A stretch of DNA of 64,000 bases from Octopus sinensis (taxonomy: Eukaryota), in the NCBI RefSeq assembly GCF_006345805.1, contig NC_042997.1:171678001-171742000 (forward strand). Direction: 5' to 3'. A model generated the notes under the pieces. It ran no database searches. It was not told the origin of the DNA and saw only the letters and a program-made list of their open reading frames with translations. The position numbers and the translations under genes are program-made. The stretch's first letter is position 1, and each line of letters begins with the position of its first letter. Of the stretch, positions 11,789 to 61,188 are shown one piece after another.

Positions 11789-12090
11789 CATCATCATCAT
11801 CACATCATCATCATCGTTAACAGTCCGTTTTCCGCGCTAGCCACGGTTTGGACGGTTTCGACCGGGGTCTGGGGAGCTAGGGACTGCCCCAGGCTCCAGT
11901 CTAGTCTGGCAGAGTTTCTACGGCTGGATGCCCTTCCTAACGCCAACCACTCCGCGAGTGTAGTGAGTGTTTTTTACGTGCCACCTGCACAGGTGCCAGG
12001 GGGGTCTGGCATCGGCCACGTTCGGATGGTACTTTTTTTTTTTTTTTTTTTTAGGTGGGGGGGGGGGGGGGTGTCAGATATAGGGGAGCA
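11789..12090 (-). mobile_element. 5'-truncated third copy of the C' constant module
   Basis: Shares the diagnostic CCGCGCTAGC..GGGGTCTGGGGAGCTAGGGACTGCCCCAGG variant with 43696 and 50500. Confidence 0.9.
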
Positions 12091-33010: not shown

Positions 33011-33110
33011 AATTTGTAAATTGTTTTTCTTTTTCATACTCCACATTATCCTTGTGAAAATTTCATATTTTTTTTATCTCATGAGACCCTCGTGGCTAAT
33101 AAACAAAAGT

Positions 33111-33141
<31 letters not shown>

Positions 33142-33729
33142 TATTATCGTTGTTGTTGCTGTTGTTGTTATAGAAGGGGGCAAGCTTGGCAGAATCATTA
33201 GCCCACCAGGTGAAATGCTTAGCAGTATTTCATCTGTTGCTACATTCTGAGTTCAAATTCCGCTGAGGTTTACTTTGCCTTTCATCCTTTCGAGGTCGAT
33301 AAAATAAGTACCAGCTGGACACTTGGGTCAATGAAATGGACACATCCCCTCCCACCAAAAACTGCTGCCCTTCTAGCAAAATTTGAAACCATTGTTATTA
33401 TTATTACTATTATTATTACTATTATTATTACTATTATTATTATTATTTTTATTATTATTATTATTGTTGTTGTTGTTATAATGTAAGGTGGCAAGCTGGC
33501 AGAATCATTAGCACACCAGTGAAATGCTTAACGGTATTTCCTCTGTCTTCATGTTCTAAGTTCAAATGCTGCTGGGGCCGATTTTGCCTTTCATCTTTCC
33601 CAGGTCAATAAATTAAGTACCAGTTATGCACTGGGATTGATGTAATCAGCTGGTCCCCTACCCCAAAATTTCAAAGCCTTGTATCTTCAGTAGAAAGGAT
33701 TATTATTATTATTATTATTATTATTATTG

Positions 33730-34149
33730 AGACGAAGAGTGTGATTCGATTGTAAGATATTTTATTGGTTGAACGATATTTCAACAGTAAGTCTGTCTGT
33801 CAAGTTCAAAATAAGAAGTGATAAAAATTCAAAATTATAGAAATTTAAATGTAAAGTATAAATAAGAGCAACCAGCATCCACACATTAATGGAATGACAT
33901 CATCAGTTTTGAAGTTACAATTTTATAACAGGTGAAAAGAAAAAGACAGAAAATATTGTAACTTCAAAACCGATGCTGTCATTCCATCAATGTGTGGATG
34001 CTGGTTGCTCTCGTTCATACTTTATGCTTAAAATTCTAAAGTTTTAAATTTTATCACTTCTTATTTTGAACTTGACAAAGACAGACTTACCGTTGAAATA
34101 TCGTTCAACCAATAAAATATCTATTGCAATCGAATTGCACTCTTCGTCT
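33730..34149. repeat. 420-bp inverted repeat (MITE-like, ~190-bp arms, ~33-nt spacer)
   Basis: AGACGAAGAGT.. / ..ACTCTTCGTCT at the ends; inner ends GTTTTGAAGTTACAAT / ATTGTAACTTCAAAAC. Confidence 0.9.
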
Positions 34150-34193
34150 TGACTGTTTACCTTTGTGAAGAATTACATCAATACTTTTTAGAA

Positions 34194-34232
<39 letters not shown>

Positions 34233-34854
34233 GCACCAGACAAAATGCTCTGTGCCATTTCTTCCAGCAGTGCATCCTGAGTTCAAATGTTGCTGAGGTC
34301 TTTGTCTTTTGTCCTTTTGGAGTCAATGAGAGAAGTACCAGAGTACCAGTTGAGCACTGTGGTCAATGCAGTTGATTATCCCACTCCTCCAAAATTTCAT
34401 GCCATGAGCATACTTTAGAAAGGATTGTCATTATTATTCTCAATATATTATACATAGGAGTTGATTTGGGAGAATTATTTGCAGTTTTTTACATTCTGAG
34501 GTCAGTAAAATATAGTACCAGTCATGTACTGACTTTGACTTAACTAAACTGTCTTTCAAAACGTCTTGCCTTGTGTTTATATTAGAAATAATTATATAGG
34601 GTGGTAGATTGGCAGAATTGTTAGACAACTGGTAAAAATATTGCTATGCAACATTTGTTCCAACTCTTTATATTCTGAGTTCAAGTCCAGCCTTGGTTAT
34701 CTCTTCCTTTTTTGGGATCCATAAAAAAAAGTATCAGACAAGAACTGGGATTGATAATACTAACTAACCCATCCTGGTGTTGAACTAAAATTTGAAACAA
34801 TTATTATTATTAGCATGGAAAGTGGACATTAAACGATGATGATGATGATGATGT

Positions 34855-35240
34855 TTAACTTTTGCTTTACATTTGTACAAGTTGGCTCCAAGTCTCATCC
34901 AGAGACCTCAAGAGACAACAAGTTGGAAGTTCATGCTGGTGTTATGCCTAGGGTGCCATATATTTGGTTTTGTACATAGTGTTGTTCTAGAGAATGTTTA
35001 AGAAACCATAAGAAAATTATGTTTGTTTTAAAACTTGAGATTACAAAGAAAGTATTTTGCATAGGATATGAGCAGTTCCCATGAGCACTATCTTTTGAAT
35101 TTCTGCCATTTTGGGGTTTCCTAGTATCTGAGCTAGGTAACAATCAGCCCCTTTTGCTATCATTCCCAGGGCACCTATGACAACAGTTATTGTTTTAGTC
35201 TTCAGGTTCTACATTTTGCTAATTTCTATTTCAAGATCTT
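34855..35240 (-). mobile_element. 3' end of a second R4/Dong-like RLE retrotransposon subfamily
   Basis: Minus-strand translation SKYKDLEIEISKM*NLKTKTITVVIGALGMIAKGADCYLAQILGNPKMAEIQKIVLMGTAHILCKILSL* (35240-35041) aligns with the C-terminus of the 41892 element. The 3' UTR is different and ends at a (CAT)n tract. Confidence 0.85.
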
Positions 35241-35465
35241 TATATTTGCTCCCCTCTCTCTCTTTTGGAGAGGCACAAGCACCTACACGCACACATACAC
35301 ACAAGGCAGTAACTTCCACCTACCGAATTCAATCACAAAGCTCCGGTCAGCTCGGGGCTATAGTGGAAGACACCTACCCAAAGTGCCACGCAGTGGGACT
35401 GAACCCGAAACCACGTAGCTAGGAAGCAAGCTCCCTAACCACACAGCCATGCCCACGCCTACAGC

Positions 35466-35504
<39 letters not shown>

Positions 35505-35720
35505 CATCATATTCTGCAAGCTGGCAGAATTATTAGCATGCCGGGCAAAATGGTTAGTGGCATTTCGACTGTCTTTATGTTCTAAGTTTAAATTCTGCCA
35601 AGGTCAACTTTCATGAATTAAGTACCAGTGAAACACTGGGGGTTGATGTAATTGACTATCCCCCTCCCCCAAATTTCAGGCCTTGTGCCTATAGTAAAAA
35701 CATTATTATCATTATTGCCA

Positions 35721-35756
<36 letters not shown>

Positions 35757-37436
35757 GAGTTTGCTTTGAGTTCAAATTCCACCTAGGTCAACTTTGCCTT
35801 TTATCCTTTCAGGGTCAATGAAATAAGTACCAGTTGAGCACTAAAGTTGATGTAAATGACTGGCCCCATCCCCCAAAATTCCAAGCCTTGTACCTATAGT
35901 AGAAAGGATTATTATTATTATTAATATTATTATTAAGGTGGTGAGCTAGCAGAATCGTTAGCAGACCAGGTAAAATGCTTAGTGGCATTTCATCCATTTA
36001 CATGTTCTGAGTTCAAATTTGGTTGAGGTTGACTTTGACTTTCATTCTTTCGGGTTTGATAAAATAAATTCCAGTTGAACAGTAGGATCAATGAGATCGA
36101 CAATCCTTCTCCCCTCAATTTCCAGGCCTTGTGCCTATAGTAAAAAAGATTATTACTATTATTGTTATTATTATTAACCGTGGCACGTAAAAGGGCACCA
36201 TTCGAGCGTGATCGTTACCAACGTCGCTTCAGTGGCACCTGTGTCGAAGGCACGTGTAAAAAGATTCGAGCGAGGTCATTGCCAGTACCGCCTGACTGGC
36301 CTCCATGAAGGTGGCACATAAAAAGCACCCACTACACTCTCGGAGTGGTTGGCATTAGGAAGGGCATCCAGCTGTAGAAACTCTGCCAGATCAAGACTGG
36401 AGCCCGGTACAGCCATCTGGTTGCCAGCCCTCAGTCAAAACCGTCCAACCCATGCTAGCATGGAAAACGGACGTTAAACGATGATGATGATGATGATTAT
36501 GGTGAGCTGGCAGAATTGTTAGAATGCCAAGCAAGATGCTTAGCAGCATTTCATCCGTCAACGTTTTGAGTTCAAATTCTGCTGAGATTGACTTTTCCTT
36601 TCATTCTCTCAGGGTCAATAAAATAAGTACCAGCTGAGCACTGTGGTTGGTGTAATTGACTTATGCCCTCCTCCAAAATTGTGGGCTTTGAGCCACTGAG
36701 GTTAACTTTATCTTTCATTCTTTTGGGGTCAATAAATTAAGTACCAGTGAAAAACTGGGGGTCGATGTAATCGACTAGTCCTCTCCCACCCAATTTCAGG
36801 CCTTTTGCCTTTAGTAGAAAGGATTATCAAATGGCGAAGAGCTGGCAGAAGCGTTAGCATGCCAGGCGAAATGCTTAGCGGTATTTCGTCTGCCCTTATG
36901 TTCTGAGTTCAAATTCCACCAAGGTCGACTTTGCCTTTCATCCTTTTGGGGTTGATAAATTAAGTACCAGTTATGCACTGGGGTCGATGTAATCAACTTA
37001 ATCCCTTTGTCTATCCTTGTTTGTCCCCTCTATGTTTATCCCCTTGTGGGCAATAAAGAAATAAAAAAGGATTATCATCATCATTGTCTTTATTGTCATT
37101 ATCAAAATGAGGATGAGGGAAAAGATTACAAGTAAAAAGATACTTGCGACATTCAGTGACTTTTCTTTAAGTCTTCAGTTCAGACCCCATGCCAACCCTG
37201 TTGAGGTCAGCTTTGCTGTTTCACCTTTTCAGGATCAATAAAAATATAAAATCAACTGCAAACCTTTCTGCCACCAAACCAATTTGTCTTGTACTTAAAA
37301 AACAAAATTAAAAATTGTACTTTTTCTATAAAAGTATGTCAGCCACATGACAAGCAAGATGCTTGTCAGAGGGAAAAAAAAAAAAACATAAATGCATTTA
37401 ATTGTAGGCCATCATTGTCCATGTCAAGTTACTTAC

Positions 37437-37498: not shown

Positions 37499-37699
37499 CT
37501 ATAAAAGTAAAAGTTACATTGAATTTTAGAAATAACATCTAATAAAAACAAACTAATAGTGATAGGCAAACATAATATTCAATTATTGTAGATCATTGGA
37601 TATATCATCATCATGAACGGTTTTTTTTTGTTGTTAGTTGTTATCATCATTGTTATCATCATGATCAACAACACCACCACCACTACTATCTCCTTCTTT

Positions 37700-38050
37700 T
37701 CCTCCTCCTCCTCCTCCTCCTCCTCCCCATCCTCCTCCCACTCTTCGTCTTTCACCTGCTCTTTCTGCTTCCCATCATGTTCCTATTCTTCTTCCTCCTC
37801 CTCCTCCTCCCCATCTGCCTCCCACTCTTCGTCTTTCACCTGCTCTTTCTGCTTCCCATCATGTTCCTATTCTTCCTCCTCCTCCTCCTCCTCTTCCCCA
37901 TCCGCCTCCCACTCTTCGTCTTTCACCTGCTCTTTCTGCTTCCCATCATGTTCCTATTCTTCCTCCTCCTCCTCCTCCTCCTCCCCATCCGCCTCCCACT
38001 CTTCGTCTTTCACCTGCTCTTTTTGCTTCCCATCATGTTCCTATTCTTCC
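37700..38050 (+). repeat. Minisatellite, 4 x 84-87 bp within (CCT)n
   Basis: CACTCTTCGTCTTTCACCTGCTC..CCCATCATGTTCCTATTC at 37739, 37823, 37910 and 37997. Confidence 0.95.
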
Positions 38051-38540
38051 TCCTCCTCCTCCTCCTCCTCCTCCTGCTCCTCATCCTCCTCCTCCTCCTC
38101 CTGCTCCTCATCCTCCTGCTCCTCATCCTCCTGCTCCTCCTCCGTCGTCATCCTTCCTTCTTTTCATATTTGTAAACAGTCGTCTCTAGGAAAAACCAAT
38201 GTAAATTTTGTGATGCTATCAAAGATATTCCAGTTTTATAATCTTTTTTCCATATATTTTTATTTTCTGACGAATAATTTCGATTAGTAGAGATTGTTTT
38301 GATAATAAATCATGTTTGGTAAATGTGCCTGTATGTGTGCACTTGCATGTGTGTGTGTGTGCACATGCATGTGTGTGTATTTATACTTGTGTGTATGTGT
38401 GTGCCTATATGTGTATTTGTGTGTGTGTGTGTATGCATGCATGTGTATGTATATATGCTTATATGTGCCTGTATGTCTGCACTTGTGTGTGTGCACTTGT
38501 GTGTGTGTGTGTGCACCTGTGTGTACACATGCATGTATAC

Positions 38541-41736: not shown

Positions 41737-43020
41737 AGTTTTATATTTAACAGATGAGGAATTATGTACATTATTTACATATGGCATATTAGTTAAGAGC
41801 GTGGGCTACTAACCCCAAGATTCTCAGTTTGATTCCAGGCAGTGACCATAATAATAATAATATTAATAATAATAATGATAATAATAATAATATCTAGTAC
41901 AAAAGACTGGATGCTGCGACTTGTGTGTGAACACGAAAGCAGCAAAAAGCTGCATTCTATTGTCAAGGAAGCTTATAAGTTCGAAAGGGAACTAGGCATT
42001 AACCTTGAATCAGGTGAAGAGCCAGAAACCACTGCTACCAAGCAAGCAAAGCGAATCAGGCAGACTGCAAAAAAGAATGGGCAGAATCAAATTGAGAGGC
42101 GGTGGAGCCAGAAGCCCCTGCATGGACAATACATTCTCCGAAGCCAAAATGCTGATGTAGACCAAGCAACAACCCATCAGTGGCTGAAGAGTTCTGGATT
42201 GAAAGCAGAGACTGAAGGCTTCATAATGGCAGCACAAGATCAAAGCTTGTTTACCAGAAATTACCAGGCTAACGTTCTCCGAAACGGTACTGACCCTAAA
42301 TGCAGATTCTGTGACACATTTGACGAACAATAGACCATCTCGTTTCGGGATGTCCTGTGCTGACACCAAACGAATAAAAAAATCGCCACGATAGGGTAGG
42401 ACAGTATATACATTGGAAGATATGTAAACACTACAAATCCGACACTCCTGCTAACTGGTATGAACACCATCCTCAGCCAGTTGTTGAAGGTAAAGATGTC
42501 ACCATCCTCTGGGATTTTCCAGTCAACACTGACAGAACGATCAAGGCTAATCGACCAGACATAATTGTTAAAGACAGGGAAGAAAATACCTGCAGACTAA
42601 TAGAAGTAAGCGTCCCCACTGATAAAAATGTATCTGTCAAGGAATTTGACAAACTTAGTAAATATAAGGACCTGGAAATCGAAATACAGAGGATGTGGAA
42701 TCTTAAAACAAAAACTGTTCCTGTTATTGTAGGTGCCCTAGGTATGATAAAAAAGGGATGTCAGAAACACCTAGACAATATCCCTGGAAAACCATGTCTC
42801 AAGGAAATCCAAAAGATTGTGCTAACAAGTACTGCCCACATCCTTAGAAAAACCCTATCAATGTAAATGTTTGTGTTTGTATTACATGGAGATATTTCTC
42901 TACTTCCCCTCCCCAAGCTTTCAGCTATATTTCAACAACTCTTAACCTTCACTTGCCCTAGGGCGCTGGGTGTGCCCCGGCAGGTGATTGCATCAAACAT
43001 GCAGATTAAAAGTAAATGAC

Positions 43021-43054
<34 letters not shown>

Positions 43055-43695: not shown

Positions 43696-45320
43696 TCATC
43701 ATCATCATCGTTTTTAACGTCTGTTTTCCGCGCTAGCACGGGTTGGACGGTTTCGACCGGGGTCTGGGGAGCTAGGGACTGCCCCAGGCTCCAGTCTAGT
43801 CTGGCAGTGTTTCTACAGCTGGATGCCCTTCCTAACGCCAACCACTCCGCGAGTGTAGTGGGTGTTTTTTACGTGCCACCTGCACAGGTGCCAGAGGGGT
43901 CTGGCATCGGCCACGTTCGGATGGTGCTTTTTATGTGGGGGGGGTGCAGAAATATATAGGGGAGCACCAGTGGGGAGGGGTGGTTCAGAGAAATGATGAC
44001 AGGTTCTAGGCAAGTAGAACGTAGGATATCAAGAGAGGGGTAATGCATGGTGAAATAGCGTGTTGAAGAGGGTGTTCGAAGAGTAGACACCTATAATGGT
44101 GGTGGGAGAAGCGACATCCGGTATAGATGGAACAAAAATATAGAGATATCCGGTATTGGTGGTGTGGGTGGGCAAGGGCGGGTGCACCGGGAATATGCGA
44201 AGGTTGAACTTTAGAGAAACAGGCGGGAATGGCGATGTTTTTAGGGTGGCATATAGAAAGAAAAGGAAAGCAAAGCAGATTGGTGGTTATAAGTTCAAAA
44301 CATTTAAACGGTAGACAAATGTATGTATGTATGAAAAAGAAGGGAGAAAATCTTCTTAGCTTGCTTATGGACATCGCTGTAGGTCGGGGAAGAAATGATA
44401 GTGAATGGTGGAGATCGAATTAAAGGAATATGCGAAGGTTGAACTTTAGAGAAACGGGCGGGAATGGCGATGTTTTTAGGGTGGCATATAGAAAGAAAAG
44501 GAAAGCAAAGCAGATTGGTGGTTATAAGTTCAAAACATTTAAACGGTAGACAATGTATGTATGTATGAAAAAGAAGGGAGAAAATCTTCTTAGCTTGCTT
44601 ATGGACATCGCTGTAGGTCGGGGAAGAAATGATAGTGAATGGTGGAGATCGAATTAAAGGAATATGCGAAGGTTGAACTTTAGAGAAACGGGCGGGAATG
44701 GCGATGTTTTTAGGGTGGCATATAGAAAGAAAAGGAAAGCAAAGCAGATTGGTGGTTATAAGTTCAAAACATTTAAACGGTAGACAAATGTATGTATGTA
44801 TGAAAAAGAAGGGAGAAAATCTTCTTAGCTTGCTTATGGACATCGCTGTAGGTCGGGGAAGAAATGATAGTGAATGGTGGAGATCGAATTAAAGGAATAT
44901 GCGAAGGTTGAACTTTAGAGAAACGGGCGGGAATGGCGATGTTTTTAGGGTGGCATATAGAAAGAAAAGGAAAGCAAAGCAGATTGGGGTTATAAGTTCA
45001 AAACATTTAAACGGTAGACAAATGTATGTATGTATGAAAAAGAAGGGAGAAAATCTTCTTAGCTTGCTTATGGACATCGCTGTAGGTCGGGGAAGAAATG
45101 ATAGTGAATGGTGGAGATCGAATTAAAGGAATATGCGAAGGTTGAACTTTAGAGAAACGGGCGGGAATGGCAATGTTTTTAGGGTGGCATATAGAAAGAA
45201 AAGGAAAGCAAAGCAGATTGGTGGTTATAAGTTCAAAACATTTAAACGGTAGACAATGTATGTATGTATGAAAAAGAAGGGAGAAAATCTTCTTAGCTTG
45301 CTTATGGACATCGCTGTAGG
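43696..45320 (-). mobile_element. Composite element C' copy A: 4.8 x ~235-bp monomers + ~500-bp constant module + (GAT)n tail
   Basis: Monomer marker GGAATATG at 44190, 44425, 44659, 44894 and 45128. The constant module (43696-44189) is near-identical to 50123-50620. Confidence 0.9.
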
Positions 45321-45334
45321 TATATATATATATT

Positions 45335-45537
45335 AACCACATGTAGATCGTTGGTGATTTTTTCCCTCCATCTTCCTTTTCTATTGGACTTACTTCCACC
45401 TCCTGTTTCTGATGAAGAGCTTTGCTCAAAATGTAAAACTACCTTTCTTTCCTTCCCTGAACATCTGCTAATACTTTGCATGTACCATGTCCTTGTGTTG
45501 TTGCTATTTTCTCGTGTTTGTTTTTGGGATTAACTAT
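45335..45537 (+). mobile_element. Family P2 short element with hammerhead motif at 45405-45439
   Basis: GTTT-CTGATGA-A-GAGC-TTT-GCTC-AAAAT-GTA-AAAC is two CpG-type changes away from GAAAC-GUA. Stem I GUUU/AAAC is perfect. Confidence 0.75.
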
Positions 45538-45538
45538 A

Positions 45539-45577
<39 letters not shown>

Positions 45578-46501
45578 ATATATATATATATATGTGTGTG
45601 TATATATATATGTGTGTGTGTGTGTATGTGTGGTGTTTATATATATATATATATCAAAACAGGAAGTTGAAAAATATTTTGAGATTATTTATTCACCATT
45701 ACACATGTTTCATTTGCTAATAGAAACTCCAAAGTTTTAGACAGAGAAATTAAATTATACTCTGCCTACATAAATATATATATAACTATATAGTCGCCAT
45801 ATTTCATTCCATAACTGCTATCTCTGAGGAGCACAAGGTTATATAATCAACCTGTTATCAAACACTTCATTGAACCCCTCATGCAAAACTAATTCGTAAA
45901 ATTGACCATAATGGATGTATAATACTTTACACTTCAATTGATATAAATATATATATATGTGAATGTGTGTATGTATATGAATGTATATATTAAGACAATA
46001 CTGCTCTTGTCAAATGCCCAGAACTGTTATACATAGCATCTACATCCTTACAGATTGTCTCTTCTTTACAGAAGATTGTGATCAGACAGTGAAACTTTAC
46101 AGTCTAGAGTAATTTTAATAGATATTTAATTTAATATCCATGACTATAGACTACGTTTGCCCTCAGTATATTTCAATATGTCATTGCACATATACACACA
46201 CAAATAGTTATGTGTGCATGCATGTATGTATGTGTGTGTGTGTGTGTGCGTTTTCATAAACACAAAGACATATACATGAATGCAGGCACACACAGACAGA
46301 CAAATACACACATGGACATATATATTGTAGACAGAAAATTAACTTTTATAGAACCACCATTAAAAGACAATAATTTTCTTTTTTTTCGAAATAGATAATT
46401 GTTATTTTAGATTCAAACATATTATTTTCCTCAGTTTCCTTTCCCCCCTTATCTGTAGCTAATCTTTTATGTATGTGTATGTATGTGTGTATGTACTTGT
46501 A

Positions 46502-46539
<38 letters not shown>

Positions 46540-46604
46540 TATGTATGCATATATATATATATATACATATATACACATATATACACACACATATATGTAT
46601 ATGC

Positions 46605-46648
<44 letters not shown>

Positions 46649-47274
46649 CATCTCCATATATGTATATAATATATATAGGCATATACATATGTATATATAT
46701 ATGTGTGTATATGTGTGTGTTTGTGACAGACTGAGAAAATTAACTTTTGTAGAACTGCCATTAAATGACAATAAATGTTTTTTTTTTCACAATAGATAAT
46801 TGTTATTTTCGATTCAAACATATTATTCTGCTCAGCTTCCTATCCCCTCTTATCTGTGGATAATCTCATACAATTTCTTTGCTTAGCTGACATCAGATAC
46901 ATGCTGGATGATATCAAGCAACTAGCAACAAGGGCTAACAAGTCTTCCTGCAGTTTTTTTACTGTTATCGCTAATATTGTTTCTCTCATCATTACAGCTG
47001 CTACTGTTGCTACTGTTGCTTTCACTTTTGTCATTCTTATTGTTATAATTGTTGCGGGTTTTATTTTACAACTGTTGTTGTTGAAAATATTTTTGATGTG
47101 CTTCTTGAATTTTCAGTAGCAGGTATTTTATTTGCTTTTGAGATTTTAGTCCATTTCAGTTTATGATAGATTTTTTACAAAAAAAAAAGAAAAAGAAAAA
47201 GAAAAATTTTTAATTTTTAGAAAAAAAAAAACAATTTTTAAATGAAAGTGTCTCCTAGAAATTTTATTGTCTGT

Positions 47275-48235
47275 GAGAATTTCTATGAGTTGATGTTTTA
47301 GTTGCCATAGCTGAATCTGTCGAAGAATTAGAAAAGAAATTTTTAAATAGGGGAGCAGAGCTCTAGAATCAAGGAGTTTTTAAGTAAACCTAGTAAAGAT
47401 AGATGTTGTAGTTAAGAAGAAAGAAGAAGAATATTATCAAGTGGGAAGCATGATCAACACCACCACCGCCACCAACTTTTTCTTTTCCTCCTCCTCCCCC
47501 TCTTCGTTTTCCACCTGCTCTTTCTGCTTCCCATCATGCTCCTATTCATCCTCCTCCCCGCTCTGTCGTCATTCTTCCTTCGTTATATATTTCACTCACT
47601 ATGAAATATAGAGGCACAAAAGATACATTAAGATCATAGGCTGAATAACAGAGAGGAAGGACTTTGTATATAATAGAGCCATTGGTACCCTCGCCGGTAA
47701 CATGTGTAAAAGATTCAAGCGAGGTCGTTGCCAATGCCACCTGACTGGCCCCGTGCCGGTGGCATGTAAAAGCACCCACTACACTCTCAGAATGGTTGGC
47801 GTTAGGAAGGGCATCCAGCTGTAGAAACTCTGCCAGATCAAGATTGAAGCCTGGTGCAGCCATCTGGTTCGCCAGCCCTCAGTCATACGTCCAACCCATG
47901 CTAGCAACCCATGATGAGGAAGAGCATGCATGATATAAAGTGTTATCAAATTTGGGGGACTGTGCTATCATGAAGTAACTGATAGCTTCTGTAACTTAGG
48001 CGACTCAATTAGCAGTTGACAAAGGTGTTCTAGAAGCTCATAAACTAGAGTAAGAATATGGAGTAAAATGTTCAGGTGACTATTTACCTTTAGTAGCATC
48101 AAAGATTTTCTTTCTCCTAGTGAAAGGCAGATATGATGCTTATGTATGAAGAGTAATGATGTGTGGCTGCTAACAATTGGCTGTGAATGCTTCAGATGTG
48201 AAGAAATAAGGCAGTGGTACTTTACTTGAGTGTAA
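47275..48235 (+). mobile_element. Old RTE-clade LINE remnant split by later insertions (47275-47410 and 47960-48235)
   Basis: A degenerate YADD region (..IAESVEELEKKF..ALESR..KVNLVK) is followed, after the insertions, by EVTDSFCNLGDSIS..TRVRIW..KGR.YDAYV. Confidence 0.65.
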
Positions 48236-48640
48236 GTTTAGTGTGTATGATCACCAAAGCACAAATAAGCTGAGAGAAAAAATTGCATATAAGGTGCAGA
48301 CGTGGCTGTGTAGTAAGAAGCTTGCTTCCCAACCACAGCATGGCACCTTGGGCAAGTGTCTTCTACAATAGCCTTCTACTATAATACATGTGTTTACATA
48401 CACATATATGTGTGTGTGTGTCCATATGTTAGTCATTTTATTGAAAATATTTTTAACCAGATTTCTTTTAAAATTATTTTAATGACCATTCTCAGGCCAA
48501 CGAAAGCCTTGTAAGTGGATTTAGTAGACAGAAACTGAAAGAAGCCTGTCATTTATATATACATGGCGGTACCCCAGCATGGCCACAGCTCATGAGCTGA
48601 AACTAGATAAAATAAATAAATAAAATAAATATATATATAT

Positions 48641-49560
48641 ATTCAATTTTGAGGGATTAATCGATATGCGGGTATTCTATTTCAGATAATACAAAAATAA
48701 CCTAATGAGTATATCTGACAATAAACTCATGGTATCACTTTGCACATCACAAAATAATACTTAAAGGATATAACCAAAATTTCCAGTTGGATATATAATA
48801 TACTTCATTAATTATATCCTACTTTAGTTAATACTTATATTTATTAAATATGAAGGAACTACATGTGTTTCAGCATTGGAAGATTACAATATATATACAT
48901 ATATAAATACATATATGCTATCGTCAGATTTACAATTATTCCAACACATCTTCAGGTTCTATTTCAAAACATTATATATCTGATTTTACATCCCTTTAAA
49001 AATAAGCAATACAATTAAGCGTTAAAGATTAAAAATTAAGAATAAAAATTATACTTTGTAATATTAAGAATTAAAATTTATAAATTATCCATTATAAATA
49101 TGAATTAGTATATATATCAATCATGTAAAATCAAGTATATGTCAAATACAGAATGTGAGATATAAGATTAAACATCAGAATAAAAATGTCTGTGTTTAAA
49201 TGTGATATATAACAAGAAAAATTCAAATACTATTTTCAGCTTCGCCTTGTATTGCATATTATTTCTCCATACAGGGGTTTTTTCAATGGCGGCCCATTTT
49301 CGCGGGGTTCCACTATTCCCTTCTCTCTCTCCCTCTTTTACGTTGTCTGCCATCCCCCCTCTTCCTTTGCTAAGAGCATTTAAGCCAGCCCGTCATATTC
49401 CCGTGTCAGGCCGAAGAACGAAATGTTCCCAAGATAAGAGAGTCTTTCTAATCTAATGTTGTGGTTGAGCTGTTTATTATTATTATTATTACTATTATTA
49501 GTAGTATTAGTATTGTCCCTTTGATCCTCGGTCGAAAATTTGCTTATTATTATTATTATA

Positions 49561-49591
<31 letters not shown>

Positions 49592-49901
49592 TTTCAGCTT
49601 CGCTTGTATTGCATATTATTTCTCCATACAGGGGTTTTTTCAATGGCGGCCCATTTTCGCGGGGTTCCACTATTTCCCTTCTCTCTCTCCCTCTTTTACG
49701 TTGTCTGCCATCCCCCCTCTTCCTTTGCTAAGAGCATTTAAGCCAGCCCGTCATATTCCCGTGTCAGGCCGAAGAACGAAATGTTCCCAAGATAAGAGAG
49801 TCTTTCTAATCTAATGTTGTGGTTGAGCTGTTTATTATTATTATTATTACTATTATTAGTAGTATTAGTATTGTCCCTTTGATCCTCGGTCGAAAATTTG
49901 C

Positions 49902-49950
<49 letters not shown>

Positions 49951-51070
49951 TTTCAGCTTCGCCTTGTATTGCATATTATTTCTCCATACAGGGGTTTTTT
50001 CAATGGCGGCCCATTTTCGCGGGGTTCCACTATTTCCCTCTCTCTCTCTCCCTCTTTTACGTTGTCTGCCATCCCCCCTCTTCCTTGCTAAGAGCATTTT
50101 TAAGCCAGCCCGTCATATTCCCGGTGCACCCGCCCTTGCCCACCCCCACCACCAATACCGGATATCTCTATATTTTTGCTCATCTATACCGGATGTCGCT
50201 TCTCCCACCACCATTATAGGTGTCTACTCTTCGAACCCCCCTCTTCAATACGCTATTTGACCATGCATTACCCCTCTCTTGATATCCTACGTTCTACTTG
50301 CCTAGAACCTGTCATCATTTCTCTGAACCACCCCTCCCCACTGGTGCTCCCCCTATATTTCTCCCCCCCCCACATAAAAAGCACCATCCGAACGTGGCCG
50401 ATGCCAGACCCCTCTGGCACCTGTGCAGGTGGCACGTAAAAAACACCCACTACACTCGCGGAGTGGTTGGCGTTAGGAAGGGCATCCAGCTGTAGAAACA
50501 CTGCCAGACTAGACTGGAGCCTGGGGCAGTCCCGAGCTCCCCAGACCCCGGTCGAAACCGTCCAACCCGTGCTAGCGCGGAAAACGGACGTTAAATGATG
50601 ATGATGATGATGATGATGATATCTTCCTTTTTTTTGCTGGTATATAATGGTGGATTGAGGAAGAAGATAGCAGGGAACTATGGGTATTTATAGGTGAATA
50701 GTACCAAGGTGGTGGTGGAAGGGTGGTAATTACACTAAACATAGATTTAATTTTAAATCATCCTCTATTATTATTTTCAAATTTACCTATATTGGGAGGT
50801 ATATATAATTTGTTGTTATATAATTTTAGTAATATTTAATTAATATATTTATTTTATTTAAATTATTGTATTATTATTTTTATTTATTTATATAGTGTAT
50901 TCAAGTGCTTTAGAAATAAAATTATATATAATTTTGGTTATATCCTTTAAGTATTATTTCGTGATGTGCAAACTGATACCATGAGTTTACTGTCAGATAC
51001 ACTCATTAGGTTATTTTTGTATTATCTGAAATAGAATACCTGCATATCAATTAATCCCCCAAAATTGAAT
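48641..51070. mobile_element. Non-autonomous TIR element (~140-bp TIRs) hosting composite element C' copy B
   Basis: 48641-48780 (ATTCAATTTTGAGGGATTAAT..GGATATAACCAAAAT) is the reverse complement of 50931-51070. Confidence 0.8.
49229..50620 (+). mobile_element. Composite element C' copy B: 2.5 x ~360-bp monomers + same constant module + (GAT)n tail
   Basis: CATATTCCC at 49394, 49752 and 50114. The module starts GGTGCACCCGCCC and ends CGGACGTTAAATGATGATG. Confidence 0.9.
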
Positions 51071-51239
51071 TTTATCTGATACTTTGTATATTTATAGATA
51101 AATATATAAATATACGATAAATAAGACCCCAAAGTACGATATGTAGATGTATATAATGCTGTAGCGTTACACCTGATTGGTTTGGAAATTTGTTTTACCA
51201 AATCATTAATATATATATATAATGAGTTAGAGGTTATAT

Positions 51240-51482: not shown

Positions 51483-51564
<82 letters not shown>

Positions 51565-51735
51565 GTATATATATATGACAGGCTTCTTTCAATTTCTGTC
51601 TACCAAATCCACTCATAAGGTTTTGGTCAGCCTGAGGCTGTAATAGAAGATATTTGCCCAAGGTGTCACACAGTGGGACTGAACCCAGAACTATGTGGCT
51701 GGGAAGCAAGCTTCTTATGACACAGCCATGCATGC
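51240..51735 (-). mobile_element. SINE family A (diverged)
   Basis: Head, long (TA)n and tail present. Confidence 0.8.
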
Positions 51736-60784: not shown

Positions 60785-61188
60785 CATACATACATACATA
60801 CATACATACATACATACATACATACATACATACATACGTACATACATACATACATACATACATATATACATACATACATACATACATGCATAAATACATA
60901 CATACAAGAATACCAAGAACTTTGGCATTACATCGTGCTTGTGAAGAAGACCCATCAAACCAAGCAAAATTGCAGTTGTAGCAGGTACTGGTGTCATACA
61001 AATGGCGCCCATGCCAGTGGCACATAAAAGTGCTCACTACACTCCAAGAGTGGTTGGCATTAGGAAGGGCATCAAACTGTAGAAAACCATGCCAAATCAG
61101 CCTTCCTGTTTACCAGACCTGGTCAAACTATCTAACCTATGCTAGCATGGACAACGGACGTTAAATGATGATGATAATGATGATGATA

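What the first reader, a model, noticed from the sequence alone, without database searches (positions are those of the whole stretch)
43696..50620. Two copies of one retro-module carrying different tandem monomer arrays fused at the same CATATTCC motif
Seen: a ~500-bp module ending in (GAT)n occurs at 43696-44189 (minus) and 50123-50620 (plus). Upstream, copy A has 4.8 near-identical 235-bp monomers and copy B has 2.5 near-identical ~360-bp monomers of a different sequence. Every monomer of both types contains CATATTCC at the exact point where the last monomer switches into the module. The 3' ~50 nt of the two monomers are weakly similar, and both contain AATGGCG (YY1-like, opposite orientations). 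Inference: either exchangeable promoter monomers analogous to rodent L1 A/F monomers, or RT template-jumping onto small circular RNAs copied several times round. No TSD was found.
Basis: partly seen in the sequence, partly recalled or inferred. Interest (0 to 1): 0.75.

Follow-up and report, generated by a model that had tools for sequence, protein, structure and literature searches.

The report
Octopus SINE-derived retroelement with swappable monomer arrays
Two copies of one ~500-bp octopus SINE-derived retroelement each carry a different tandem array fused at exactly the same 8-10 bases, which looks like 5' monomers of the mouse L1 type or a chimera made by reverse transcriptase, but other genomic copies were out of reach, so the two cannot be told apart here.

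Summary
The window is octopus DNA. Two inverted copies of a ~490-bp module plus (GAT)n tail are 97% identical. Each is preceded by near-identical tandem monomers: 4.8 x 234/235 bp and 2.5 x 358-362 bp. The two monomer types are unrelated. All eight CATATTCC in the 64 kb lie in these arrays, and the last one in each array starts the module.

The module's 3' ~220 bp belongs to an abundant (GAT)n-tailed octopus SINE family (27 copies in 186 kb). That family has its own variable 62-bp monomers (1-12) and alternative 5' heads. The module's 5' ~255 bp and both long monomers match nothing else I could reach.

Simple in-situ duplication of flank plus 8 bp is disfavoured, because both arrays start out of phase with the junction. 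Retrozyme membership fails: no hammerhead or other ribozyme, and no unusual RNA stability. The arrays carry four T>=4 runs per monomer, whereas canonical SINE copies carry 0-1, so a unit transcript would need pol II.

Best reading (0.4): a composite element with heritable, exchangeable 5' monomer arrays of the L1 type, acquired by microhomology-primed template switching. Main rival (0.27): one-off chimeric retrocopies. The source genome could not be searched, so this is undecided.

The parts
43696..43710 (-). (GAT)n tail of copy A
   Evidence: Sequence reads CGATGATGATGATGA on the minus strand. Homology with copy B ends here.
43711..43935 (-). SINE-derived 3' part of module A: two 62-bp-type units, the core, and the tail-proximal region
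   Evidence: It aligns with family copies in the window and in O. vulgaris. It has no T>=4 run on the sense strand.
43936..44189 (-). 5' extension ('tether') of module A, not repeated
   Evidence: It is shared only with copy B at 97%. It is absent from 122 kb of O. vulgaris. It contains one T5 run.
44190..45321 (-). Array A: a 194-nt partial monomer followed by four monomers of 234/235 bp. Each ends in CATATTCC, and the last 8 nt (44190-44197) are also the first 8 nt of the module.
   Evidence: TRF and monomer dissection. Monomer pairs differ by 0-2 substitutions, and two of the changes are CpG>TpG.
49228..50121 (+). Array B: a 174-nt partial monomer followed by monomers of 358 and 362 bp, each carrying two (TTA)n tracts. 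The array starts exactly after the (TTA)n position of the unit. The last 8 nt (50114-50121) are also the first 8 nt of the module.
   Evidence: TRF and dissection. There are no substitutions between units, only homopolymer and microsatellite indels.
50122..50375 (+). 5' extension ('tether') of module B. It begins CGGTGCACC, which contains the perfect palindrome GGTGCACC at 50123.
   Evidence: The sense RNA folds with z about -2.8 to -3.0.
50376..50594 (+). SINE-derived 3' part of module B
50595..50620 (+). (GAT)n tail of copy B
   Evidence: TRF finds (ATG) x 8.7. Homology with copy A ends here.
11817..12090 (-). Third copy of the same SINE subfamily (96% identical). It covers module positions ~240-481 only and abuts a long (TA)n tract, so it has neither the extension nor an array.
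36180..36495 (+). Canonical full-length copy of the (GAT)n SINE family (three 62-bp units, core, tail), used as the reference for what the module's 3' part is

Best explanation
The two loci are retro-copies, made by target-primed reverse transcription (TPRT), of a composite non-autonomous non-LTR retroelement of an octopus. From 3' to 5' it consists of four parts. (i) A (GAT)n tail and about 220 bp of an abundant SINE family; this is the part a partner LINE reverse transcriptase would recognise. (ii) A ~255-bp non-repeated extension that plays the role of the mouse L1 'tether'. (iii) The 8-10-nt junction CATATTCC(CG). (iv) An array of long monomers.

I take the arrays to be a regular, heritable part of the element, with at least two monomer types (A 235 bp, B ~360 bp) sitting on two module lineages that differ by about 1.6%. 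The 5'-most partial monomer then marks either the transcription start or the point where reverse transcription stopped.

The monomers and the extension contain pol III terminators, whereas canonical family copies have almost none. The unit would therefore have to be transcribed by pol II from within the monomers, as in mouse L1, the LINE-promoter (LP) SINEs of molluscs, or SVA (the hominoid SINE-VNTR-Alu element).

Each monomer type was probably acquired when reverse transcriptase reached the 5' end of the module RNA and switched template. The switch would have been primed by 8-10 nt of base pairing to an unrelated template that was itself repeated, circular, or copied end to end.

Shown: the anatomy, the family membership of the 3' part, the non-chance junction, the out-of-phase array starts, the T-run contrast, and the modularity of the family. 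Inferred: heritability of the arrays, pol II promoter function, and the template-switch origin.
For: - Both copies end exactly at their (GAT)n tails, and their outer flanks are unrelated. They are therefore separate tail-defined insertions rather than one segmental duplication.
- The 3' part belongs to a SINE family with 27 copies in 186 kb.
- That family is itself modular. It has 1-12 tandem 62-bp monomers and alternative heads in other subfamilies.
- Both full-length module copies in the window carry an array, of two unrelated kinds, joined at the same nucleotide. If array formation were a rare accident, two out of two would be very unlikely.
- CATATTCC occurs nowhere else in the window.
- Both arrays begin with a partial monomer (194/235 and 174/358). 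This fits 5' truncation or an internal transcription start, as in mouse L1, where elements start inside an outer monomer and a 200-313-bp tether follows (PMC9022269).
- Sense-strand T>=4 runs number 20 in array A, 13 in array B and one (a T5) in the extension, against 0-1 in canonical copies, including a 12-monomer copy.
- Monomer B carries CAATGGCGGC followed by TTTCGCGG in the sense orientation. From general knowledge these resemble YY1 and E2F sites. YY1 activates mouse L1 Tf monomers (PMC11602158).
- Template switching of the LINE reverse transcriptase is the accepted route for head and module exchange in mollusc SINEs, including heads taken from LINE promoters (PMC4758252).
Against: - No further copy of the extension or of either monomer was found in the rest of the window, in 122 kb of O. 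vulgaris, or in any searchable collection. Heritability is therefore untested.
- Monomers within an array are much more alike than the two modules are: A has 0-2 substitutions per 235 nt and B has none, against 8 substitutions plus 5 indels in 485 nt for the modules. The arrays were therefore formed or homogenised recently, which fits formation at or after insertion at least as well.
- There are no TSDs.
- In monomer A the GC-box and AATGGCG motifs are antisense to the element.
- Promoter activity is not tested.
Confidence: 0.4

Rival explanations
1. The two loci are one-off chimeric retrocopies. In each insertion event the reverse transcriptase copied a plain module RNA to its 5' end. Its cDNA end, the complement of CATATTCC(CG), then paired with an unrelated RNA. 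That RNA was copied several times over, either because it was circular, or a transcript of a tandem array, or a linear RNA re-entered end to end. Integration followed. The arrays would be records of that event and not a functional or heritable part of the element.
For: - Monomers are nearly identical, and their few differences are private to single monomers: A has 2 CpG transitions, one 1-nt deletion and a T-run length change, and B has no substitutions. This is as expected if all units came from one template at one moment.
- The two modules differ by 1.65% plus indels, so they came from different source copies.
- Selection by base pairing explains why unrelated sequences share only the 8-10-mer.
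- Array B starts exactly at the position following the unit's (TTA)n tract. The unit therefore looks like a tailed linear RNA whose 5' end was the stopping point.
- The missing TSDs fit an aberrant resolution of the 5' end.
- The T-runs make the arrays look foreign to a pol III SINE.
- An O. vulgaris copy carries 11 near-identical variant 62-bp monomers seen nowhere else in 186 kb, so copy-specific array growth does occur in this family.
- Retrocopies of circular RNAs are known in mammals (PMC4897178).
Against: - Both of the two full-length copies are chimeric with multi-round arrays, so the event would have to be very frequent. Known chimeric retrocopies are rare (my general knowledge).
- Other family copies in 186 kb show ordinary heads or monomers at their 5' ends.
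- Nothing points to circles: no ribozyme, and folding z-scores between -0.5 and +0.8.
- Internal pairing over 8-10 nt is not the usual end-to-end jump (my general knowledge).
Confidence: 0.27
2. The arrays arose by DNA-level events after insertion. The 5' end of the module, next to the perfect palindrome GGTGCACC, would be a breakage or fork-stalling hotspot. Repair by replication slippage or microhomology-mediated template switching then amplified upstream DNA, or copied in a piece of a tandem array from elsewhere.
For: - A palindrome sits immediately 3' of the junction in both copies.
- Microhomologies of 8-10 nt are in the range used by replicative repair (my general knowledge).
- The arrays are very young.
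- The monomers are not dispersed repeats.
- Tandem arrays derived from SINE pieces occur elsewhere in octopus DNA, for example the 137-bp array at L001 3682-4496.
- TSDs are absent.
Against: - A simple tandem duplication of flank plus the first 8-10 nt of the module must give whole units in the junction register. Both arrays instead begin with a partial unit, lacking the first 41 nt (A) or 184 nt (B), so extra deletions are needed in both.
- Slippage between two CATATTCC sites is excluded for the same reason.
- Two independent loci would need the same breakpoint.
Confidence: 0.12
3. Two local satellites already existed. The module inserted beside each of them, and its 5' end was joined by microhomology at a CATATTCC in the array, deleting the target DNA in between.
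For: This would explain the missing TSDs, the fixed phase at the junction, and the arbitrary phase at the far end of each array.
Against: - It needs two unrelated pre-existing arrays that each happen to contain the 8-mer (about 6e-5 by chance), each hit by the same rare element.
- The DNA beyond the tails is not array sequence.
Confidence: 0.05
4. The arrays, or their copy numbers, are assembly artefacts.
For: Most differences between units are homopolymer or microsatellite length changes, which are typical of long-read consensus error.
Against: - Two different arrays show clean, specific junctions.
- Array A has CpG>TpG substitutions private to single monomers.
- Arrays of this kind are common in an independent O. 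vulgaris chromosome assembly.
Confidence: 0.05

Closest known systems
Mouse LINE-1 5' UTR: A, Tf and Gf monomers plus tether (PMC9022269, PMC11602158)
   Same: Head-to-tail monomers of about 200 bp lie at the 5' end and vary in number. The outermost monomer is usually partial. A non-repeated tether of 200-313 bp sits between the monomers and the rest of the element. Unrelated monomer types occur on related elements. YY1-type motifs occur in the monomers.
   Different: Here the carrier is a ~490-bp non-coding SINE derivative with a (GAT)n tail, not an autonomous LINE. The monomers are 235 and ~360 bp and nearly identical within an array. Both types join the tether at the same nucleotide through a shared 8-10-mer. 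Promoter activity and family-wide occurrence are untested.
Modular ('jigsaw') mollusc SINEs and LP-SINEs whose head comes from a LINE promoter (PMC4758252)
   Same: They are non-autonomous elements with short tandem-repeat tails. Their 5' heads are exchanged between families, probably by template switching of the LINE reverse transcriptase. Possible pol II transcription has been proposed for the LP-SINEs.
   Different: Those heads are single-copy fragments. No long monomer arrays and no common microhomology junction are described there.
The (GAT)n-tailed octopus SINE family itself (seen in the window and in O. vulgaris GCA_951406725.2)
   Same: The module's 3' ~220 bp has the family's 62-bp units, core and tail. 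The family already carries a variable tandem region (1-12 units) and alternative heads.
   Different: Canonical copies lack the ~255-bp extension and the long monomers. They also avoid T>=4 runs on the sense strand.
Metazoan non-LTR retrozymes (PMC7229834; bioRxiv 10.64898/2026.07.22.740005)
   Same: They are tandem genomic copies of 170-400-bp units thought to be copied from small circular RNAs by a retrotransposon reverse transcriptase.
   Different: The defining hammerhead ribozyme is absent on both strands. The monomers show no unusual RNA stability. Here the arrays are fused to a SINE tail.
Chimeric retrocopies and circRNA-derived pseudogenes (PMC4897178; U6-L1 type chimeras as cited in PMC4758252)
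   Same: A second RNA is joined to the 5' side of a retrocopy by a template switch during reverse transcription. Non-colinear or repeated order arises when the template is circular.
   Different: Known cases are rare and usually involve one pass over the template. They generally join at RNA ends rather than at an internal 8-10-nt match.
SVA and other VNTR composite retrotransposons of hominoids (from general knowledge)
   Same: They are composite, non-autonomous, pol II-transcribed elements mobilised in trans. They contain a variable tandem array and a SINE- or retrovirus-derived 3' part.
   Different: The VNTR of SVA is internal and has 35-50-bp units, and it is of one kind only. There is no sequence relationship to the octopus element.

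Membership tests
(GAT)n-tailed octopus SINE family | Conserved core (…CACTACACTC..GGAGTGGTTGGCGTTAGGAAGGGCATCCAGCTGTAGAAAC…) followed by the 3' region and a (GAT)n tail | tested here: met
   Module positions ~263-481 align with 8 other copies from the window and O. vulgaris, with long invariant blocks. There are 27 core hits in 186 kb. Translated ORFs hit only O. vulgaris hypothetical proteins derived from this repeat.
(GAT)n-tailed octopus SINE family | One or more ~62-bp GGTGGCACGTAAAAAGCACC… units upstream of the core | tested here: met
   The module has two such units, the upstream one degenerate. Family copies have 1-12.
(GAT)n-tailed octopus SINE family | Sense strand free of T>=4 runs (compatible with pol III) | tested here: not met
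   This holds for the SINE part (0 runs). It fails for the composite: one T5 in the extension and four runs per monomer in both arrays. The composite is therefore a derivative and not an ordinary member.
L1-type monomeric 5' region | Head-to-tail monomers at the 5' end with a partial outermost monomer, followed by a non-repeated tether | tested here: met
   Partial first units are 194/235 and 174/358 nt, and a ~255-bp extension follows.
L1-type monomeric 5' region | The same monomer type is found on many copies, with variable number | not testable with these tools
   The source genome is not searchable here. There are no further copies in the window, in 122 kb of O. vulgaris, or in the metagenome, viral and prokaryote collections.
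L1-type monomeric 5' region | Monomers act as a pol II promoter with transcription starts inside them | not testable with these tools
   Only motif-level hints exist: AATGGCGGC plus TTTCGCGG in the sense orientation in B, and GGGCGGG plus AATGGCG in the antisense orientation in A.
L1-type monomeric 5' region | The element is an autonomous LINE with ORFs | tested here: not met
   No ORF with any homologue was found. The body is a SINE derivative. The resemblance is therefore functional and not membership.
Non-LTR retrozyme | A hammerhead ribozyme in each monomer | tested here: not met
   Rfam gives no ribozyme match at E<=10 over either array or module. There is no CUGANGA core on either strand.
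Non-LTR retrozyme | Tandem monomers of about 170-400 bp | tested here: met
   Monomers are 234/235 bp and 358-362 bp.
Non-LTR retrozyme | Highly structured circular RNA | tested here: not met
   Circular and linear MFE z-scores lie between -0.5 and +0.8 on both strands of both monomers.
Canonical TPRT insertion | 3' end at the element's tail | tested here: met
   Homology between the copies stops at the (GAT)n tails and the flanks are unrelated.
Canonical TPRT insertion | Target-site duplication | tested here: not met
   No shared k-mer of 8 nt or more lies within ~80 nt of either end, and the 6-7-mers found are not adjacent to the boundaries. By eye, at least one ordinary family copy (window 36180) does have plausible short duplications.

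The most novel reading that the evidence does not exclude
Octopus genomes may hold a SINE-derived, pol II-driven composite retrotransposon that repeatedly replaces its 5' promoter array. It would do so by pairing the end of its cDNA (the complement of CATATTCC…) with any RNA that carries the same 8-10-mer and copying that RNA round and round. If so, each monomer type is a genomic fossil of a small circular or multimeric RNA, and the system is a convergent, non-autonomous counterpart of mouse L1 monomer turnover, caught at the moment of acquisition.
Probability: 0.15. Interest if true: 0.8.

Novelty: new variant of a known kind. Interest (0 to 1): 0.5.

Why it matters
How retrotransposons acquire new promoters, and how L1-type monomer arrays arise, is still unknown. 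The mouse monomers are old, so their origin cannot be reconstructed. Here two unrelated, almost undiverged arrays are fused to the same element at the same nucleotide through a visible microhomology. If the structure is general in the source genome, it would make the acquisition step directly testable. It would also help explain why octopus genomes hold hundreds of 'unclassified' SINE families (PMC13282606). If instead the arrays are one-off products, they would show an unusually jump-prone reverse transcriptase and would record which small RNAs it met.

Tried and rejected
**Searches for other copies**
- Protein database with an ORF spanning monomer A and the module: no hit.
- Protein database with a concatenated six-frame translation of both monomers and the extension: no hit at E<=1.
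- Only the SINE-part ORF hit anything, namely six O. vulgaris hypothetical proteins. Their six loci (122 kb) contain the SINE family but neither the extension nor the monomers.
- Exact-pattern scans of metagenome contigs with two patterns found nothing. Scans of viral contigs and prokaryote genomes with the SINE core also found nothing, so these collections hold no octopus DNA.
- A full-text search for the SINE core sequence and for cephalopod SINE, tandem and template-switch literature found no description. The supplement of the O. vulgaris repeat paper holds no library.

**Known RNA classes**
- tRNA or tmRNA origin: ARAGORN found none.
- Rfam families, including ribozymes: none in the arrays or module.

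**Structural alternatives**
- One inverted segmental duplication is rejected, because the flanks beyond the tails are unrelated and the arrays differ.
- A composite DNA transposon with the two modules as terminal inverted repeats has no flanking duplication, and the modules end in SINE tails.
- Integration of a circle at a CATATTCC core site is rejected, because the arrays do not begin at the core.
- Common ancestry of the two monomers is rejected at the sensitivity used.

**Source species**
- It was not identified. Repeats in the window are at most 95% identical to the O. vulgaris sample. The module's subfamily (96-97% among its three copies) reaches only 89% there.

Full report
**What is there**

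The window is octopus DNA. A reading frame through the module's 3' half finds only 'hypothetical predicted protein [Octopus vulgaris]' entries that are themselves translations of the same repeat. Many repeats of the window recur at up to 95% identity in six O. vulgaris chromosome pieces that I fetched.

The two module copies are 43696-44197 (minus strand) and 50114-50620 (plus strand). They align at 97% over 504 columns. The homology begins exactly at CATATTCC and ends in the (GAT)n tails. Upstream of the modules, TRF finds 4.8 copies of a 234/235-bp unit at 44190-45321 (99% matches) and 2.5 copies of a 358-362-bp unit at 49228-50123 (98% matches).

Every unit contains CATATTCC once, and the last occurrence in each array is the first 8 nt of the module. 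In array B the shared stretch is 10 nt, CATATTCCCG. These eight sites are the only CATATTCC in the 64 kb on either strand. The chance expectation is about 0.007-0.01 per monomer, so about 6e-5 for both monomer types.

One sub-claim fails: the 3' ends of the two monomers are no more similar than shuffled sequence, and the monomers resemble neither each other nor the module.

**What the module is**

Only its 3' ~220 bp is a common repeat. A third copy at 11817-12090 is 96% identical and covers module positions ~240-481 only. Seven to eight more distant copies lie elsewhere in the window.

Counting the conserved core, there are 27 copies of this family in 186 kb of window plus O. vulgaris. The family consists of a (GAT)n tail, a conserved core, and a variable number of ~62-bp units (GGTGGCACGTAAAAAGCACC…) upstream of the core. 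Unit number runs from 1 up to 12.4 in O. vulgaris L004 16163-16933. The variant unit amplified at that locus occurs nowhere else in the sample.

Other subfamilies carry a different ~70-nt head in front of the 62-bp units. The family is therefore modular at its 5' side and prone to tandem arrays. An unrelated 137-bp array in L001 is made of the SINE's last 113 bp plus its tail.

The module in the window is this SINE with two 62-bp-type units, extended 5' by about 255 bp of sequence. That extension occurs only in the two copies under study.

**What the arrays are not**

- Not a known RNA. ARAGORN finds no tRNA. Rfam finds nothing in the arrays or module even at E<=10.
- Not retrozyme-like. The hammerhead core CUGANGA is absent on both strands. 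The monomers fold no better than dinucleotide shuffles, whether circular or linear (z from -0.5 to +0.8). Membership in the retrozymes, whose defining feature is the hammerhead (PMC7229834), is therefore rejected, and a viroid-like circle is unsupported.
- Not dispersed repeats. There is no other copy in the window or in 122 kb of O. vulgaris, and no translated match in 5.8 billion proteins.
- Not an inverted segmental duplication. The outer flanks are unrelated, and the homology stops at the tails.

**What the phase of the arrays says**

In the register set by the junction, array A is a 194-nt partial unit followed by four whole units. Array B is a 174-nt partial unit followed by two whole units.

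A tandem duplication of 'upstream flank plus the first 8-10 nt of the module' must give whole units in that register. Slippage between two CATATTCC sites would leave non-homologous sequence upstream of the first site. Neither is observed, so a simple in-situ origin needs an extra deletion in both arrays.

The arrays thus behave like periodic sequence with a fixed 3' phase and an arbitrary 5' end. That is what a 5'-truncated or internally initiated retro-copy looks like. It is also what reverse transcription going several times over a repeated or circular template looks like.

Array B begins exactly at the position that follows the unit's (TTA)n tract. This fits two readings equally well: a transcription start just downstream of an AT-rich tract, or the 5' end of a tailed linear RNA.

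**Polymerase**

Canonical copies of the SINE family, including the 12-unit copy, have 0-1 runs of T>=4 on the sense strand but several A-runs. This is the usual mark of a pol III-transcribed SINE. Array A has 20 such T-runs, array B has 13 (four per monomer in each), and the extension has one T5.

A pol III transcript starting in the arrays could not reach the tail. If the composite is transcribed as a unit, it is by pol II, as for L1, SVA and the proposed LINE-promoter (LP) SINEs of molluscs (PMC4758252). Monomer B carries CAATGGCGGC and TTTCGCGG in the sense orientation, which resemble YY1 and E2F sites (my general knowledge). Monomer A carries GGGCGGG and AATGGCG in the antisense orientation. 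This is suggestive only.

**Ages**

Units of array A differ by 0-2 substitutions per 235 nt, and two of the changes are CpG>TpG private to one unit. Units of array B differ by no substitution, only by homopolymer or microsatellite length. The two modules differ by 8 substitutions and 5 indels in 485 nt, and the third copy differs from both by 3-4%.

The two modules therefore descend from different source copies. The arrays are several-fold younger than that split, or have been homogenised since.

**Weighing the explanations**

The junction is not chance, and both full-length copies in the window carry an array. The arrays must therefore be causally linked to the module's 5' end.

- **Heritable monomer arrays (0.4).** I rank first the reading that the arrays are a regular, heritable part of a composite element, with monomers and tether of the L1 type (PMC9022269). 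If array formation were a rare accident of single insertions, two out of two full-length copies would be very improbable. The family around it also shows inherited tandem units and exchangeable heads. The origin of each type would be a template switch at the 5' end of the module RNA, primed by the 8-10-nt match. Template switching is the accepted route of module exchange in mollusc SINEs (PMC4758252).
- **One-off chimeric retrocopies (0.27).** It is favoured by the near-identity and private differences of the units, by the missing TSDs, and by the unit-boundary start of array B. It needs an unusually high rate of such events.
- **DNA-level amplification or microhomology-mediated repair (0.12).** This would occur at the palindrome GGTGCACC that follows the junction.
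- **Insertion beside pre-existing satellites (0.05).**
- **Assembly error (0.05).**

**What could not be done**

The decisive test is a catalogue of all copies of the extension and of both monomers in the source genome. That was out of reach. None of the DNA collections holds octopus sequence, and the protein route gave only random O. vulgaris loci. The literature held here does not describe this element.

**Verdict**

This is a real, statistically solid and unusual structure: a SINE-derived retroelement carrying two interchangeable long monomer arrays at one microhomology junction. It is best filed as a new variant of monomer-bearing or composite non-LTR retrotransposons, with the mechanism still open.

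Noticed in passing
window 48616-48781 and 50930-51095 (also 48303-48564 and 51563-51728): Element B (array plus module) lies inside a ~2.1-kb spacer between two inverted arms that are 91% identical over 166 bp. A copy of a tRNA-like SINE sits just outside each arm in mirrored orientation. This may be a long-TIR or foldback element, or an inverted duplication, into which B inserted.
   Followed up: partly
window 33100-36180: There is a head-to-tail pile-up of (ATT)n-tailed tRNA-like SINEs. Each sits in the tail of the one before, which points to tail or microsatellite-targeted insertion. A canonical (GAT)n SINE (36180-36495) is inserted into one such tail.
   Followed up: partly
window ~33730-34150: A near-perfect palindrome of about 420 bp (MITE or foldback-like) is inserted between two (ATT)n tracts.
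   Followed up: no
window 37699-38071 and ~47460-47580: An 87-bp unit (TCC-rich, …CACCTGCTCTTTCTGCTTCCCATCATG…) is present as 4.3 tandem copies at one place and as a single copy at another, about 100 bp upstream of a (GAT)n SINE copy. It is another repeat with variable tandem number.
   Followed up: no
window 41842-43052: A 5'-truncated LINE 3' end, including the C-terminal part of its ORF, is bounded by (ATA)n on one side and its (AAT)n tail on the other. This is as expected for a LINE that targets (TAA)n microsatellites. Dong-R4 LINEs are reported as recently active in O. vulgaris (PMC13282606).
   Followed up: no
L001 3682-4496 (O. vulgaris OX597840.1): A 137-bp tandem array with 5.9 copies at 97% matches. 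Each unit is the last 113 bp of the (GAT)n SINE plus its tail, and the array follows one fuller SINE copy.
   Followed up: partly
L004 16016-16940 (O. vulgaris OX597839.1): A (GAT)n SINE copy with 12.4 tandem 62-bp units. Eleven of them are a variant unit found nowhere else in 186 kb, while the 5'-most unit is canonical. This indicates copy-specific or subfamily-specific amplification.
   Followed up: partly
L003 ~262-330, L003 ~10440-10380 (-), window ~60940-61010: Other subfamilies of the (GAT)n SINE carry a different ~70-nt head (GTGCTTGAGGAGACCT…AAATGGAAATTGTAGTT) in front of the 62-bp units, so 5' heads are exchangeable in this family.
   Followed up: partly
window 44181-44188 and 50123-50130: The perfect 8-bp palindrome GGTGCACC starts one base after the CATATTCC junction in both module copies. 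It occurs only three times in the whole window.
   Followed up: no
L006 9-1511, 8230-9953, 14980-17105: Long arrays with an 84-bp period (28 codons) lie inside called genes. By period alone they look like tandem C2H2 zinc-finger repeats, a gene family reported as expanded in octopods (PMC9795677).
   Followed up: no
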